Translations under genes and position numbers: made by a program
The notes under the pieces: generated by a model
The model's database searches: none
What the model saw: only the letters and a program-made list of their open reading frames with translations
Told to the model about the DNA's origin: nothing
DNA from: Euprymna scolopes
Taxonomy: Eukaryota
Direction: 5' to 3' (one strand)
DNA length: 64,000 nucleotides
NCBI GenBank assembly: GCA_053919585.1
Contig: CM132783.1
In this document: positions 1 through 7,576 of the stretch, piece by piece
Layout of the letters: each line of letters starts with the position of its first letter
Position numbering within the stretch: the first letter of the stretch is position 1

Positions 1-1415
1 ATATGGAATTCTAAGCGACATACACAATATGGGAATAAGAGAAAATATTTATACAAAACTTCCCGTCTCAAAGATATTACAAAGTATGACAAGGAAACAC
101 ACTATCAGATCAATACGAGCAAGAAGCAGGAGTGCCACAAGGTAGTATATTATCCACCACCTTATTCTTAATTAAAATAAATGAAATTACACACATTGTC
201 GACACACAATTTGAAAGATCATTATTTGTAGATGACTTTTCAATTGCATATTTTTCATTAAATATAACAATTGAAAGAAAGATGCAGCAATGCTTAAACA
301 AAATAGAAAACTGGATCGATAAAAATGGATTCAAGTTGGCACAAAACAAAACTGTCTGTATTCATTTCTGCAGAAAACAAAAATATCATCTAGACCCACA
401 ACTACAAATACAAGGAAACCCAATCCCAATAGCATAACACACGAAATTTCTAGGTATTACACTGGACAATAAACTTAATTTCAATATGCATATTACTAAC
501 TTAAAGCAAAAATTCCAAAAAGCAATGAAAATTTTAAAAGTAATATCAAAAACAGACTGGATAGCAGACCAAGACACAATGTTAAAAATATACCAGGCAC
601 ACATAAGGTCAAAATTAGATTATGGATACATCACATATAGCTCCACCCATAAATCCTATCTCCAAAAGTTAATACCCATACAAAATCAAGGATTAAGACT
701 CAGTCTGGGAGCATATCAAACATCACCCATGGAAAGCCTATACATAGAAGCCAATAAACCCCCTCTACATTTAAGATAGCAGAAATTAATAACACAATAC
801 GCAATAAAACTACAAAGTGATCCAAACAACCCAATACACGAAAAAACCTTCAACCTACAATATACACACTTTTACACCAGCAAACCAAAAAACATACCTT
901 CTTTCGGATATCGCATCAAAGAAATATTAACTCAAATTAACGAAAACCCTAATAACATAGTCACACACACAGTAAGCAACAAACCACCATGGACTTTGAA
1001 AGATCCAAGCACTGATCTGACTCTTACTAAATACCAAAAAAACAATACCAACAACTTAATAAATAAAAGCTCCTTCGGCAAACTCAGAGAAAAGTACCTA
1101 CAACACAAAGAAATATACACTGATGGAGCCAAAACAAAAAAGGAACAGGTGCGGCATGTACAGATGGAAAGAACCATCTCCAAATAAGACTTCCCATCGA
1201 TACATCAATATACACAGCAGAACTACAAGCAATCAAAATGGCACTTGAATTAATTAAGAACAACAATAAGAAAAAATTCATTATATATACCGATTCTTTG
1301 TCATGCATCTTAGCTCTAAAAGGAGAAGAACTAGAGCATCCTTATATATTAAATATAATGAACAAATACAATGAAATTATTGAAAAAGGTAAAGAAATAA
1401 TCTTAGCCTGGATAT

Positions 1416-1555
1416 TGTAATATCCCTAACCCCTCATCCCTTGAATGAACTCTTCCGTTAACTATAAAGGCTGCGTAATTAACGCTATTTGTGACTTGCT
1501 TTCTTTAGTGAATAAAACCTTTACAAAGGTATTCGGCTCTTCATTTTTCACTACA
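1416..1555 (+). repeat. 5' LTR of the Gypsy element
   Basis: Direct repeat of 5207-5346; TATAAA at 1463-1468, AATAAA at 1511. Confidence 0.96.
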
Positions 1556-1573
1556 ATTTTATTCACAAAAGAA

Positions 1574-4500
1574 ATAGACCAAGTACTTCGTCCCGAACGA
1601 TTCGACACCGAGTCTACAGCCTTCAATGCAGAAAAAAAGTACAAACACTGGAAACTCACGTTTATGAATTACTTACATACGGTTAACGGCACTGAAGAAA
1701 CTGGAAACACCCAAACTGACTTCTATGCTTTGATAAATAGCATATCGGCTGATGTATACGAAATAATCAGTGACACAAGCGACTATGCATCTGCCATGAG
1801 AGCTCTGGACGCGGCATACATCAGGCCTACTAATATCGTTTACAACCGACACCAACTTATTACCATGAAACAACAACCAGCGCAAACAGTGGATTCTTTC
1901 AGGCTACAGTTGGAAAACCTCGCTAAGACATGCAACTTCCAAGCCGTGAGTGCTGAAACAAATAAAAGCCAATATATGCGGGAGGCTTTTATTAGCGGTA
2001 TCTCCTCCTCCTCAATTCGGCAACAACTTCTCGAGAAATCCTCGCTAACTTTTCGGGAAGCATACGAGATGGCAAGATCTCTGGAACAAGCAGAAAAACA
2101 CTCTGCGTGTTACAACCAGGAGAGTGTGATTTCTGCGCCAATAATCGCTTCAGGAGAAAATACGAGTCTAGCTGCAACACAAAAAAAACGAGGCCAAAGG
2201 AAATTTGTTTTTCTGCAGGAATTCTTGTCATTCGCGTCGCCTTTGTCCAGCACGGGACTCGAACTGCAATAAGTGTTCAAAAAAAAAAGGACACTGGGCC
2301 AAAGTCTGCAAATCTTCCATGTCAGCGGTGTTAAATGAAGACACTGATTTCCCGAGTCTCGCATGTCTAGGAAGGAAAAAAGACATTACTTTTACTAAGT
2401 GTAAAATAAATAGATTCACTGTCCATGCCATGATAGATTCTGGTAGTGTGGGGACTTTCATTAACGACAATATTGCAAAAAAAATGAACCTCGAAATTAT
2501 TCCCAAACACAAAGAAATATCATTAGCCGACCCTAAAATGTGTGCGAAAATTGTGGGAGAAACTAAAGTCGATATCTCTCTAAATAATAATGTACACTCT
2601 AACATAATTGTGGAGGTCATTAAAAATTTATTTGTCGACTTAATCTTAGGAAAAGATATTCTCGGCAGATACAAGATGGTAACTTTCAAATTCGATGGAC
2701 TGGAGGAAGAACTTATTATCGGAGCAGTCACCAAGAATACCTTTTTTTCATCCATGAACGTTTCTCCTCCCCCATTATTTTCTCATCTCTCTACGAAAAC
2801 AACACCAATCAGCACTAAGTCACGTCGCCACACAATTGCTGATAGCAAATTTATAAGAGCAGAGACTGCAAAATTGTTGGAGGAAAACGTTATAGAACCC
2901 TCAATTTCACCTTGGCGAGCACAAGTTCTAGTACAAGTTCTAGTAACATTGAATGAAAACCGAAAAAAAAGAATGGTGATTGATTATAGCGACACAATCA
3001 ACAGATTTACTGAATTAGACGCTTATCCGATACCAAGTATATCAAAGATTGTCGAGGAAGTAGCCAGGTATAATGTTTTCACTACGCTTGATCTTAAATC
3101 AGCATACCATCAAATCCCCATCAGTAAAGAGGATCGTAAATTTACAGCATTCGAGGCGAATGGTAAATTATACCAGTTTACTCGCCTACCGTTCGGGGTT
3201 ACTAATGGAGTAAGTGCCTTCCAAAGGACCATTGACGGCATTGTCAGCAAAGAGCAATTAGTAGATACTTTTGTCTATGTGGATAATGTTACTATCTGTG
3301 GAAAAACCCAAAAAGAGCATGACTATAATCTTCAAAGATTTTATGAGGTTGCTAAACAGTACAACATCACGCTTAATAAAAAAAAAAGCATCGTTTCAGT
3401 CTCAACGATAACATTACTTGGGTACACTATCAAAAACAACCTGATATCACCCGACTAAGAACGTCTTAAACCTCTACTTGAGATGCCACCTCCTTTAAAT
3501 CTAAAATCACAAAGACGGATTATTGGGATGTTCTCCTACTACAGCAAATTTATCCAGAATTTTTCAGAGAAAATATTAGCACTAAACCGCAACAGAGAAT
3601 TCTCGTTATCTTCTGCGGCGTTGGACTCTTTTATAAGACTGAAAAACGACTTGAAAGATGCTATGCTGGTAACGGTTGATCCAGAAAAAGAATTTATAGT
3701 AGAAACAGATGCTAGTAACAACTGTATTGCAGTTACCCTTAATCAAGAGAATCGTCCGGTTGCATTCTATTCCAGAACACTAAGCCCTAGTGAAACGAAA
3801 CATCACGCGGTAGAAAAAGAAGCAGCTGCTATTGTTGAAGCACTACGTAAGTGGCGACATTTTCTCCTTGGTAAACACTTTACTGTAATTACGGACCAAA
3901 AAAGTATTAGCTTCATGTTTGATAATACCAGGAAATCAAAAATAAAAAATGACAAAATATGCCGTTGGCGCATTGAACTGTCACAATTTAAGTTTAGCAT
4001 CGTCTACCGTCCTGGTAGAGAAAATATTGTCGCTGATACGTTTTCCCGAATATCTGCTCTCACTTATTCCTTACAAGATCTTCGGGACCTACACTGTAAA
4101 TTATGCCATCCAGGCATTACCCGACTCTTCCATTTTTGCAAAGAAAGAAACTTTCCTTTCTCCCTCGATCAAATAAAAGGAGTAACTAATTCGTGCTCGT
4201 CTTGCCAGTATTTAAAACCCAAATTCTTCACCGGTAACGAGGGAACTCTCATAAAAACAATATTACCATTTCAGCAATTAAACATGGATTTCAAGGGCCT
4301 ACGTTCACACATGGTAACAAATACCTACTTACGATAATCGACGAATACTTGCGTTTTCCTTTTGCATTTCCATGTAAAGATATGACAAGCTCAACAATCA
4401 CACAATGCCTGAATCAACTATTTGCGATATTTGGTATGCCCGATATGATTCACACAGATAGAGCGAATGATTTTCTGTCGGAAGAAACGATCAATTACTT

Positions 4501-5088
4501 ACATGGGAAAGGCATTGCGACTTCGAAAACGAGTAGATATCACCCGGAAGGCAATGGTCAAATTGAGAAACTAAATGGCACACTATGGAAGGCCATACAA
4601 ATAACCTTACATTCTCGTAAAATGAGACTATCTTGCTGGGAAAATATTCTACCTGATGCTCTACATTCTATTCGATCATTGCTCTCTGCACAGCTACGAA
4701 TGCGACCCCTCATGATAGACTATTTAAGTACAGCCATAAATCCACTTCTGGTACTTCTATTCCCCTGTGGGCAAAACCAGGCCAAGTATACGTCAGAGAT
4801 CATATTAGGTCGAGTAAAAATGACCCCCCGGTTACACCTGTGACGTTACTGGAGATCAACCCTCATCATGCCCAAGTACGACTACCTTCAGGCATCGAAA
4901 CTACCGTCAACGTCTGAGATTTGGCTCCCAACACAATTAATGGAGACAACACATTAGAGAATGGTTGCATGCCACCTGTGAGTAAGCCAGGAAGTGAAAA
5001 CGAATGTATAATGCCAACCGAGTCGCTGCGTAGATCTGGCAGGATACTGAAATTTCCTGAGAAATACAAGGACTTCATTACTAAGTAA
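1574..5088 (+). pseudogene. Gypsy gag-pol, broken by frameshifts and a stop
   Basis: Gag LRPERFD and zinc knuckles (CNKCSKKKGHWAKVC); protease IDSGS; RT SPWRAQV, LDLKSAYHQ, LPFG, YVDN; RNase H ETDAS/EKEA; integrase HPGI..CSSC, IHTDR, GNGQIEK. Confidence 0.92.
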
Positions 5089-5206
5089 GGCACAAAAAAA
5101 AAGTTTAAATTATAGGCAAAAAAAAAAAAAAAAAGTTAGAGAAAAAAAATAATGAAAAAAAAAATATAAATAAAATAATAACAAAAAAAAAACTTGAAGG
5201 GGAAAG

Positions 5207-5346
5207 TGTAATATCCCTAACCCCTCATCCCTTGAATGAACTCTTCCGTTAACTATAAATGCTGCGTAATTAACGCTATTTGTGACTTGCTTTCTTTTGT
5301 GAATAAAACCTTTATGAAGGTATTCGGCTCTTCGTTTTTCACAACA
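5207..5346 (+). repeat. 3' LTR of the Gypsy element
   Basis: Direct repeat of 1416-1555, preceded by the polypurine tract. Confidence 0.96.
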
Positions 5347-7576
5347 GATACCAAGTTATGTTGGTATTCCAGGCAATGAAGAAATTGACAAATTGGCCAA
5401 AGAAGCCATTAGCAAAAATATAACAAACATCAAAATACCATACACAGATTTCGGCAGAAAAATAAGGGAATATAACAAAAATAAATGGCAAACAGAATGG
5501 GACACATATACCCAAAACAAACTACACGAGCACCAACCCATATTAAAACACAAAAACAAAACAACAATAAAAGGACGAAGAGAAAATATCGTTCTAAACA
5601 GAATCAGACATACCAAATTAACACACGCACACCTAATCGAAGCAACAGAAAAACCAAAATGCACTTTCTGCGACAAACAGATGACAATAAAACATTAACA
5701 GAATGTCAAAAATACGAAACTACCACAAATAAATATTATACAGTAAACGAAATCAAAGAATTGTTTCAGAAGGTAACACCACACCAAATCATCAAATACT
5801 TAAAAAAAATACAACTCTTCAAATCACTTTAAACCGTAAAAACTAAAAAATTTTAAAAACAAACTCTGACAATAATAATAAAAAAACAACAAAAACTATC
5901 TCAACTAAATACATAGCTTGGCACTAAATGGCCCACAGTGGTTGATATGCCGTGAGGCCCCAATAAACCAACCAACCTGTTGGCCATAAGTAGCGACCTG
6001 TAATACCATAAGGATGGACTCCTGGTGGTTGAGGGACTTGGAGGTCAGGTTTTAACACCCTCACTTCCCAACACACCACTTTGGCCTTTACTAGGCTAGG
6101 CTACTGGGCAGTCAGAAGGGCCCAATCCGATCAATCGGCTAGTCATGTCAAGCCCCGCCATATATAGCCCACTCCAAAAACCCACCATTAACACAACATG
6201 CTCATCCCTTTCCCACAAATAACACCTATTGTCTAATATATGGTGGAAAGCGGTGGCTGGGGGTCAATCGACTAAGTGAAAATATCTATGATATGGCTGC
6301 AAACCCTTTAAATTACTACATATCTCATAGTATCATCAAATGAAAACAGGTGCTCATGAAAGATATCACTAAAATTGAGTATATCATCCTTGTAGCCTTG
6401 TTGAGCCTGAATGGGTTATCCCTCAGGCACTTTCCATATAGGGCTTCGAGGTAGGTGGGGAACAACGATGATGAAAAAACAATCACGATTATGGTTTTTA
6501 TCCCCCCCCCCCCAAAAAAAAAGCTTTTCATATATTTCCAACATTTCAAGTTCAGAGGATGAACAGAAATGCTCAATCAAAGAAAACTCAACAATATTTT
6601 TAGTAATGGAAACACTTGAAAAAAATGAAATAAATAAAATTTCACCTTTTACAATGGAAAAAATTTTCTCAAAAAATAAAACCCAAAATGATAAAAAGAC
6701 TGCAAAACAACACCATACTTATCGAATTGAAACAAAAAACACAAGCTAAAGAAATTCTCAAATGGCAAACCTTTAACAATATCAAAATTAAAACTTATTC
6801 CCACCCATACCTAAACTCCTCAAAAGGAGTCATTAGATGCAGTGAACTATCAAATTGCTCGACTGAGGAAATATTATGTAATTTATCATCCCAAAGTGTT
6901 ACAGAAGTAAAAAGAATAAGCATAAAACGAAATGGAGAAACTATATTGACAAATACATATATACTCTCCTTTGACTCAACAAATCCCCCAAATGAGATTA
7001 AAATTGGATACCTAAAAGTAAACGGTGGAGAATACATCCCAAACCTTTAAGGTTCTACAATTATCAACAATTTGGACATCACCAATCCAAATGCACCAAA
7101 TCATCAATCTGTGTAAGATGTGGCGAAAACCCAAAGCATAGTGACTGCAAAAAAGACTAGAAATGCACAAACTGTAATGAAAATCATTCAGCTGATTTTG
7201 AAGGATGCAAAACATAGCTAAAAGAAAAAGAAATAACAACAATAAAGTACACAAAAAATATAACTTTCCCGGAAGCCAGAAAAAATTATGAACTCAGAAA
7301 GCTGAAATAAACACAAATCAAAGTAGTCAAAAATATACAAAACAACCTCCAGAAATAAAAACTGAAGAACTATCTCAATTGATAAGAGATAAAAGACCTA
7401 ATGAAATAAATCAAAACACTAATCCTGAGCACTGGAAATAATCAATAATCAATCTACAAAAGAAAGTATAACAAAAAAACACAACCAACAAACTAAAAAA
7501 CCCAAATTAAACCAAATAAAGAAAAAGAAAAAGCTCACCAAGTGAAAACAATCCTTATAAACAAACGAAATCAGAG

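What the first reader, a model, noticed from the sequence alone, without database searches (positions are those of the whole stretch)
1500..1574. Gypsy element with no tRNA PBS: an 18-nt PBS-position sequence is complementary to its own LTR (candidate self-priming)
Seen: 1 nt after the 5' LTR there is no TGG. Instead TTTTATTCACAAAAGAAA (1557-1574) is the exact reverse complement of TTTCTTTTGTGAATAAAA in the 3' LTR (5291-5308), and 17/18 against the 5' LTR (1500-1517). That LTR segment starts about 32 nt after TATAAA (1463-1468), near the expected transcription start. Known: fission-yeast Tf1 and its chromovirus relatives prime reverse transcription by annealing the mRNA 5' end to the PBS. Inference: this element, which has no visible chromodomain (SPWRAQV/YVDN lineage), primes itself. 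The leader is also minimal, since the likely gag start (ATA at 1574, probably a mutated ATG) abuts the PBS.
Basis: partly seen in the sequence, partly recalled or inferred. Interest (0 to 1): 0.8.

Follow-up and report, generated by a model that had tools for sequence, protein, structure and literature searches.

The report
Self-priming Gypsy retrotransposon lineage in animals
A dead jumping gene in this mollusc genome, and its distant relatives in other sea animals, lack the usual docking site for a host tRNA; the site instead pairs with a stretch of the element's own end, so this animal lineage probably starts copying itself with its own RNA, as shown so far only for a fission-yeast element.

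Summary
Confirmed. The window holds a dead 3.9-kb Ty3/Gypsy copy (LTRs 1416-1555 and 5207-5346). One base after the 5' LTR, 1557-1574 is the exact reverse complement of 5291-5308 in the 3' LTR and matches 1500-1517 at 17/18.

Of 29 other copies fetched, 25 keep the 18/18 pairing, and all 29 have a start codon where the window has ATA. Eight further families are 29-55% identical to one another in PR-RT. They come from marine metagenomes, sequencing runs and a ctenophore genome. Each has its own, different 11-15-nt LTR segment exactly complementary to the sequence 1-2 nt after its LTR. Shuffles (one of 2000 in one family) and internal control windows do not reach this.

No tRNA fits, and the site's letters change with the LTR. 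There is no chromodomain, and the RT is no nearer to Tf2 than to other Gypsy clades.

Best reading: Tf1-type self-priming in a separate lineage of compact Gypsy elements in animals. Not shown: the transcription start, the RNase H cut, and the primer on cDNA. RNA contigs suggest a poly(A) site 17-22 nt after the AATAAA that lies inside the primer arm.

First readers of this scan noted the same signature in other elements of this genome.

The parts
1411..1415 (.). Target-site duplication, left copy (GATAT; the right copy is GATAC at 5347-5351). The host is a degraded non-LTR element.
   Evidence: RNA/DNA contigs of other copies of the host element join 1410 to 5347, with 4 letters that fit both sides (table 5).
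1416..1555 (+). 5' LTR, 140 nt, TGTAAT...CTACA
   Evidence: Aligned with 5207-5346, 6 differences.
1463..1468 (+). TATAAA box. It predicts a transcription start near 1493-1494, about 6 nt before the arm.
   Evidence: Sequence; kept in 28 of 29 other copies. The spacing rule is general knowledge; the start was not mapped.
1500..1517 (+). LTR arm, the proposed self-primer (17/18 in this copy; 18/18 in 25 of the 29 other copies)
   Evidence: (I6).
1511..1516 (+). AATAAA poly(A) signal, lying inside the arm
   Evidence: Sequence. Contigs of oligo-dT/poly(A) RNA runs end at 5324 and 5329 in the 3' LTR, 17-22 nt after the 3' copy of this signal (table 8).
1518..1529 (+). Small hairpin (CCTT-TACA-AAGG) stacked directly on the arm/PBS duplex
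   Evidence: Folds. An ACC..GGT hairpin stands at the same place in L064.
1534..1555 (+). Probable U5, if the poly(A) site is at about 1533 (1538 in another run)
   Evidence: X4 contigs 5202-5324 and 1504-2990 overlap by 30 nt. This is a k=31 graph branch at 1533/1534, not a transcript start.
1557..1574 (+). Primer-binding site complementary to the element's own LTR; starts 1 nt after the LTR
   Evidence: I5, I6; intact in 28 of 29 other copies.
1574..5088 (+). gag-PR-RT-RNase H-IN reading frame, broken in this copy: start codon lost, frame changes near 2200 and 4300-4350, in-frame stops at 3456-3458 and 4841-4843
   Evidence: ORF list; Pfam. The best other copies stay open for 446-447 aa from the start codon, so gag and pol share one frame.
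5196..5206 (+). Polypurine tract GAAGGGGAAAG, abutting the 3' LTR
   Evidence: Sequence.
5207..5346 (+). 3' LTR
5291..5308 (+). 3' LTR copy of the arm, 18/18 complementary to 1557-1574
   Evidence: I5.

Best explanation
The window holds a fossil copy of a compact (3.9 kb, 140-nt LTRs, one gag-pol frame), chromodomain-less Ty3/Gypsy family. The family starts reverse transcription with its own RNA, not a tRNA.

Proposed steps:
- Transcription starts a few bases before 1500 (inferred from TATAAA).
- The first ~18-24 nt of the RNA (1500-1517, in R) fold back over a 39-nt loop and pair with 1557-1574, next to U5 (pairing shown in sequence and folds).
- The element's RNase H cuts after the arm, as in Tf1 (inferred by analogy).
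- The freed 3' end is extended over 1556-1518, giving a very short strong-stop cDNA (inferred).
- The remaining ~16 nt of R (1518 to about 1533) guide the jump to the 3' R (inferred; the poly(A) site is supported by RNA contigs).
- Plus-strand synthesis copies the RNA primer back into the site, which keeps the arm and the site matched over time (inferred).

The same design, with different letters, is found in most sampled relatives, so it is a trait of the lineage. Because AATAAA lies inside the arm in four of the nine families, the duplex may also hide the 5' copy of the poly(A) signal.
For: - Window pairing: 18/18 and 17/18, starting 1 nt after the LTR.
- Other copies: 25 of 29 keep 18/18.
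- Eight further families (L061, L064-L069, L073) are 29-55% identical to one another in PR-RT. Each has an exact 11-15-nt complement between its own LTR and the sequence 1-2 nt after that LTR.
- Controls: 0-1 of 2000 shuffles reach these lengths, and internal control windows reach at most 8-11 nt.
- Covariation: all 11 junction-anchored pair positions are Watson-Crick in 9/9 families, with 2-4 pair types each, against 36-39% pairing when the partner is slid.
- Folding: the minimum-energy folds pair the arms in all nine families (16-18 of 18 in the window family, all pairs in the others), z -2.9 to -5.6.
- tRNA: none in the window. No tRNA gene in the genome fits the TGG at the gag start, and the positive control pattern found 2306 tRNA-Thr units. 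The site's letters differ in every family, unlike a tRNA site.
- Position: the site stays next to the LTR even where gag starts about 340 nt further on (L067). The LTR end marks where minus-strand synthesis starts, so the primer must sit there.
- RNA: the family is present in oligo-dT/poly(A) RNA runs, with a break 17-22 nt after AATAAA.
- Tf1 mechanism as reviewed in PMC7175516.
Against: - The transcription start is not mapped. The contig start at 1504 is an assembly effect.
- In L068 and L069 the arm lies 93-112 nt before the LTR end and TATA-like boxes are ambiguous, so the arm might lie in U3 there.
- L072 has only 9 pairs with a bulge, and L071 has no clear match (8 nt).
- After the cut only about 16 nt of R would remain for strand transfer.
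- All 30 copies of the window family seen are broken.
- There is no biochemical evidence.
- The host's full tRNA set could not be fetched.
Confidence: 0.78

Rival explanations
1. The duplex is an RNA structure with another role, and the true primer is something not yet recognised. Possible roles: hiding the cap-proximal AAUAAA so that the 5' LTR is read through, controlling gag translation, or packaging and dimerisation.
For: AATAAA lies inside the arm in the window family, L064, L065 and L066. In the window family the A of the start codon is the last paired base. Strong local folds.
Against: Five of nine families have no AATAAA in the arm. The site follows the LTR end, not the start codon (L067). 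A structure-only role does not explain the fixed 1-2-nt distance from the LTR end, which is where a primer's 3' end must sit. No other candidate primer site exists between LTR and gag in the window family, because gag abuts the site.
Confidence: 0.12
2. The arm lies in U3, upstream of the transcription start, so only the 3' LTR copy is in the RNA. The site then pairs with the 3' end of the same or a second RNA, giving end-to-end cyclisation or priming in trans.
For: Placing AATAAA in U3 is a known way to avoid 5' polyadenylation (general knowledge of some retroviruses). The arm is far from the LTR end in L068 and L069. A T-rich TATTTG-like motif lies 4-10 nt before the arm in 8 of 9 families and could be a weak TATA.
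Against: In the window family a canonical TATAAA sits 37 nt (first T) before the arm. In L061 and L067 the arm begins at the A of a TCAGT initiator-like motif. If the arm were in U3, R would be 16 nt or less.
Confidence: 0.05
3. Priming by a host tRNA or tRNA fragment: the 3' end at the TGG of the gag start, an internal part, or a 5' fragment.
For: Other copies read TGGACCGAG... from 1575. Steamer-like elements of molluscs, also compact with one reading frame and short LTRs, have been assigned a tRNA site (PMC11046912). Another element of this genome was read by the scan as using a tRNA-Phe 5' end (s1-244830).
Against: That TGG is 20 nt beyond the LTR end. No tRNA gene with the matching acceptor stem exists: 0 hits, then 1 non-tRNA hit at about the chance level (control). 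The 18-mer is 22% G+C, unlike nuclear tRNAs. The best match to the 107 tRNA-like sequences fetched is 7 nt. The site differs in every family while tRNAs are conserved.
Confidence: 0.04
4. Chance inverted repeat in A+T-rich DNA.
For: The region is A+T-rich and the window has many short inverted repeats.
Against: 0 of 2000 shuffles reach 18 nt, and control windows reach at most 9 nt. The feature recurs at the same place in eight independent families.
Confidence: 0.01

Closest known systems
Tf1/Tf2 of Schizosaccharomyces pombe (self-primed Ty3/Gypsy elements)
   Same: No tRNA site. A sequence right after the 5' LTR pairs with the start of the element's own transcript. One gag-pol reading frame. 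A small stem-loop beside the duplex. Mechanism as reviewed in PMC7175516.
   Different: Tf1 pairs 11 nt; here the pairing is 11-18 nt. Tf1 carries a chromodomain and belongs to the chromoviruses; none is found here. RT-RNase H is only 25-26% identical to Tf2, no closer than to other Gypsy clades. The LTRs here are 104-140 nt. AATAAA lies inside the primer arm in several families. Priming is shown by experiment for Tf1 and is only inferred here.
Other predicted self-primers: Tf1/sushi group of fungi and vertebrates, Tcn1 clade, plant Ty1/copia TAR lineage (PMC6317226, PMC6934838)
   Same: Predicted from the same sequence signature: LTR/PBS complementarity and no tRNA match.
   Different: Those are chromoviruses or copia elements. 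This is a chromodomain-less Gypsy lineage of animals (ctenophore and mollusc by DNA; insects and a nematode by protein only).
Mag lineage of Gypsy (SURL / C-clade; Steamer-like elements of bivalves)
   Same: Compact elements with one gag-pol frame and short LTRs, abundant in molluscs (PMC6238403). The LTR ends (TGTNAT.. / ..AYAACA) resemble the Mag C and Mag A motifs tabulated in PMC3601003.
   Different: Membership was not tested by phylogeny, for lack of named reference sequences. A Steamer-like element was reported with a tRNA-Asn site (PMC11046912), not a self-complementary one.
Retroviral U5-IR / U5-leader stems and the HIV-1 5' poly(A) hairpin (general knowledge)
   Same: R/U5 sequences pair with sequences around the primer site. 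A hairpin can mask the 5' AAUAAA.
   Different: In retroviruses a tRNA is still the primer and the site begins with TGG.

Membership tests
Ty3/Gypsy (Metaviridae) LTR retrotransposons | LTRs with TG..CA ends, target-site duplication and polypurine tract; domain order PR-RT-RNase H-IN | tested here: met
   (LTRs, duplication, tract). Pfam RVT_1, RT_RNaseH and rve in that order. The best solved relative is the Ty3 Gag-Pol.
Self-primed LTR retrotransposons (Tf1-type mechanism) | No tRNA-complementary site next to the 5' LTR | tested here: met
   The site's letters differ between families. The full host tRNA set was not available.
Self-primed LTR retrotransposons (Tf1-type mechanism) | The sequence just after the 5' LTR is complementary to a segment of the element's own LTR, kept through compensating changes in relatives | tested here: met
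   9 of 11 families, exact 11-18 nt, 1-2 nt after the LTR.
Self-primed LTR retrotransposons (Tf1-type mechanism) | The complementary segment is the very 5' end of the transcript | tested here: inconclusive
   TATAAA is 37 nt before the arm. A TCAGT initiator-like motif stands at the arm start in L061 and L067. RNA was available only as contigs, which cannot show a start.
Self-primed LTR retrotransposons (Tf1-type mechanism) | RNase H cuts the RNA duplex, and the element's own RNA is found on minus-strand strong-stop cDNA | not testable with these tools
   Needs biochemistry.
Tf1/sushi group (chromoviruses) | Chromodomain at the C-terminus of integrase | tested here: not met
   No PF00385 at E<=0.01 in the window pieces or in 8 intact relatives, which have 130-240 residues after the integrase core. 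None in the precomputed Pfam lists of the 120 relatives listed.
Tf1/sushi group (chromoviruses) | RT groups with Tf1/sushi in a phylogeny | tested here: inconclusive
   No tree with named references was possible. By fold alignment, RT-RNase H is 25-26% identical to Tf2, 30% to 297/17.6 and 26-27% to gypsy, 412, opus and Ty3, so there is no special affinity.
Mag lineage (A/B/C clades, SURL-like) | RT/IN phylogeny with SURL, Mag and Jule; short LTRs with TGTNATRT / AYANAACA-like ends | tested here: inconclusive
   The LTR ends match 6-8 of 8 positions of the motifs in PMC3601003 Table 3. Phylogeny was not done.

The most novel reading that the evidence does not exclude
An old and widespread lineage of compact, chromodomain-less Gypsy elements in animals, perhaps the Mag lineage or part of it, primes itself as a rule. 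It either came to this independently of Tf1/sushi or kept it from an early LTR element. In part of the lineage the primer arm carries the poly(A) signal, so one duplex both makes the primer and silences the 5' poly(A) site.
Probability: 0.45. Interest if true: 0.65.

Novelty: new member of a known kind. Interest (0 to 1): 0.55.

Why it matters
- Scope: self-priming has been shown by experiment only in Tf1 and predicted mainly for chromoviruses and one plant copia lineage (PMC6317226). Here the same signature, with compensating changes, marks a separate lineage found from a ctenophore to a mollusc. tRNA-independent priming may therefore be common in animal genomes.
- Annotation: pipelines that require a tRNA-type site (for example the 12-nt tRNA search in PMC13524379) will call such elements 'PBS-less' or assign weak tRNA matches.
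- Host defence: elements that do not use a tRNA should escape defences aimed at the tRNA site, such as 3'-tRNA fragments (abstract of PMC7472051).
- Origin: the finding bears on the proposal that the first LTR elements were hairpin-primed and that tRNA priming came later (PMC3601003).
- The window copy itself is an ordinary dead insertion.

Tried and rejected
- Covariation inside the family: the copies are 95-98% alike and differ only by scattered single changes, so they are uninformative.
- Host tRNA set: the Rfam tRNA search of the genome returned only one huge tRNA-Thr-like tandem array. The tRNA test therefore rests on pattern searches and on the argument from variable site letters.
- Transcription start from public RNA: all runs are kept as contigs. 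The contig start at 1504 overlaps the contig ending at 5324 by exactly 30 nt, so it is a k=31 graph branch and not a start. I use it only as a hint for the poly(A) site.
- The TGG at the gag start as a tRNA site: rejected (20 nt from the LTR, no matching tRNA gene).
- TGGCG motifs just before gag in L061, L067 and L068: noted, but they lie 20-345 nt from the LTR end and their continuations differ, so they are not primer sites.
- L071 (about 30% identity): an LTR of about 404 nt and only an 8-nt match. L072: 9 pairs with one bulge. Both count as not showing the trait.
- Rfam: nothing. The bacterial promoter/terminator scan is irrelevant here.
- The original Levin and Lin & Levin papers are not held. 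The Tf1 mechanism is cited from a review.
Consensus lines printed by the alignment tools were ignored.

Full report
**What is there.** Positions 1416-1555 and 5207-5346 are two 140-nt LTRs (TG..CA ends, 6 differences). They are flanked by a GATA(T/C) duplication, with the polypurine tract GAAGGGGAAAG abutting the 3' LTR. Between them lies one gag-PR-RT-RNase H-IN frame of about 1170 codons, in Ty3/Gypsy order and with no chromodomain. The element is only 3.9 kb. It sits inside the RNase H region of a degraded non-LTR element, and contigs of other copies of that host element join 1410 directly to 5347. This copy is dead: its start codon is lost and it has several frame changes and stops.

**The observation.** 1557-1574 pairs with 5291-5308 at 18/18 and with 1500-1517 at 17/18 (I5 and I6). 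The site begins one base after the LTR. None of 2000 shuffles of the LTR reaches 18 nt. Other 22-nt windows of the same element reach at most 9 nt against the LTR.

**Other copies in the genome.** The genome (5.9 Gb; the RNA runs that hold the element are labelled mollusc) has at least 40 copies at 95-98% identity. I compared 29 of them with the window.
- 25 keep the 18/18 pairing.
- All 29 read a start codon where the window has ATA, so gag abuts the site.
- All are broken. The longest stay open for 446-447 codons from the start, so gag and pol share one frame.
- They also show a TGG at 1575-1577 that the window copy has lost, and I treated this as a rival primer site. It lies 20 nt beyond the LTR end.
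- A pattern for a tRNA gene with the matching acceptor stem finds nothing. A looser pattern finds one non-tRNA hit, about what chance predicts. The same kind of pattern finds 2306 tRNA-Thr units as a control.

**Diverged relatives.** An exhaustive protein search with the PR-RT piece gave many polyproteins of about 1200 residues at 33-44% identity. I fetched DNA for ten of them. Eight families showed the trait. They are 29-55% identical to one another in PR-RT. In each, the sequence 1-2 nt after the LTR end is an exact complement of a segment of that family's own LTR.

| Family | Length of complement (nt) |
|---|---|
| L061 | 14 |
| L064 | 12 |
| L065 | 14 |
| L066 | 12 |
| L067 | 12 |
| L068 | 13 |
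| L069 | 15 |
| L073 (ctenophore genome; two identical 104-nt LTRs) | 11 |

- The letters differ from family to family.
- Shuffles reach these lengths 0-1 times in 2000, and about 300 control windows per element reach at most 8-11 nt.
- Anchored at the junction, all 11 pair positions are Watson-Crick in all nine families, with 2-4 pair types each. Sliding the partner drops pairing to 36-39%.
- Minimum-energy folds pair the arms in every family (z -2.9 to -5.6).
- Two further families do not show the trait clearly: L072 has 9 pairs with a bulge, and L071 has 8 nt only.

**Why a primer site and not just a hairpin.** The LTR end marks where minus-strand synthesis begins, so the 3' end of the primer must sit within a couple of bases of it. 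That is where the complementary block starts in all nine families. This holds even in L067, where gag begins about 340 nt further on. A tRNA site would be conserved between families. This one changes together with the LTR.

**RNA.** The family is present in oligo-dT and poly(A) RNA libraries from several studies, but only as assembled contigs. In run X4 the contigs tile 1504-5109 and 5202-5324. The 30-nt overlap between the piece ending at 5324 (= 1533) and the piece starting at 1504 is a graph branch at 1533/1534. Run X10 breaks at 5329 (= 1538). Both breaks lie 17-22 nt after AATAAA, which suggests the poly(A) site and places the arm in R, if transcription starts about 30 nt after TATAAA (1463-1468). 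The start itself remains unmapped. After a Tf1-like cut at 1517/1518, about 16 nt of R would remain for strand transfer.

[quoted passage not shown] Similar signatures have been predicted for the Tf1/sushi and Tcn1 chromoviruses and for the plant copia TAR lineage (PMC6317226; PMC6934838). The present lineage differs in several ways.
- It lacks a chromodomain in eight intact members and in the 120 relatives listed.
- Its RT-RNase H fold is no closer to Tf2 (25-26% identity) than to 297/17.6 (30%) or to gypsy, 412 and Ty3 (26-27%).
- Its LTR ends resemble the Mag A and Mag C motifs of PMC3601003. I could not test that membership by phylogeny.
- I found no paper in the held library that reports self-priming for such animal elements. 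A Steamer-like mollusc element was assigned a tRNA-Asn site.

**Earlier notes of this scan.** First readers flagged the same LTR/PBS signature in several other Gypsy families of this genome, and follow-up agents in two BEL/Pao families. I did not test those. They agree with the view that the trait is common here.

**Verdict.** The best reading is Tf1-type self-priming in a separate, widespread lineage of compact Gypsy elements in animals (confidence 0.78). It is a new member of a known kind of system. The priming step, the RNase H cut and the transcription start remain inferred.

Noticed in passing
G000:C11:1.68-2.17 Mb (loci L031-L060): More than 2300 tandem 144-bp units, each holding a tRNA-Thr(TGT/AGT)-like gene. 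Some have the anticodon changed to Lys- or Ser-type. It is in effect a tRNA-gene satellite.
   Followed up: partly
window 1-1415 and 5347-5900: The Gypsy copy is nested in a degraded non-LTR (LINE-like) element with an RT region and an RNase H reading frame. RNA/DNA contigs of public runs hold the uninterrupted form (joint 1410->5347).
   Followed up: partly
window 3277-3288 (RT active-site box) and relatives P0018, P0109, P0159: The RT catalytic box reads Y-x-D-N instead of Y-x-D-D in the window copy and in 111 of 176 box matches among the 268 relatives fetched. These include intact polyproteins and the ctenophore copy with identical LTRs.
   Followed up: partly
L067:256-440: Four to five tandem 37-nt repeats in the long leader between the self-complementary site and gag.
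   Followed up: no
window 1485-1493 and the equivalent place in L061, L064-L067, L069, L073: A T-rich motif (TATTTG / TTTGT) lies 4-10 nt upstream of the LTR arm in 8 of 9 families, and the arm ends in AA-3' in 8 of 9. It may be a core-promoter or cleavage signal.
   Followed up: no
window 5089-5195: An A-rich, low-complexity spacer of about 105 nt lies between the end of pol and the polypurine tract. RNA contigs break or diverge there.
   Followed up: no
L061:745-756, L067:529-540, L068:~75-90: A TGGCG motif lies shortly before the gag start in three families. It is too far from the LTR end to be the primer site, and its continuations differ.
   Followed up: partly
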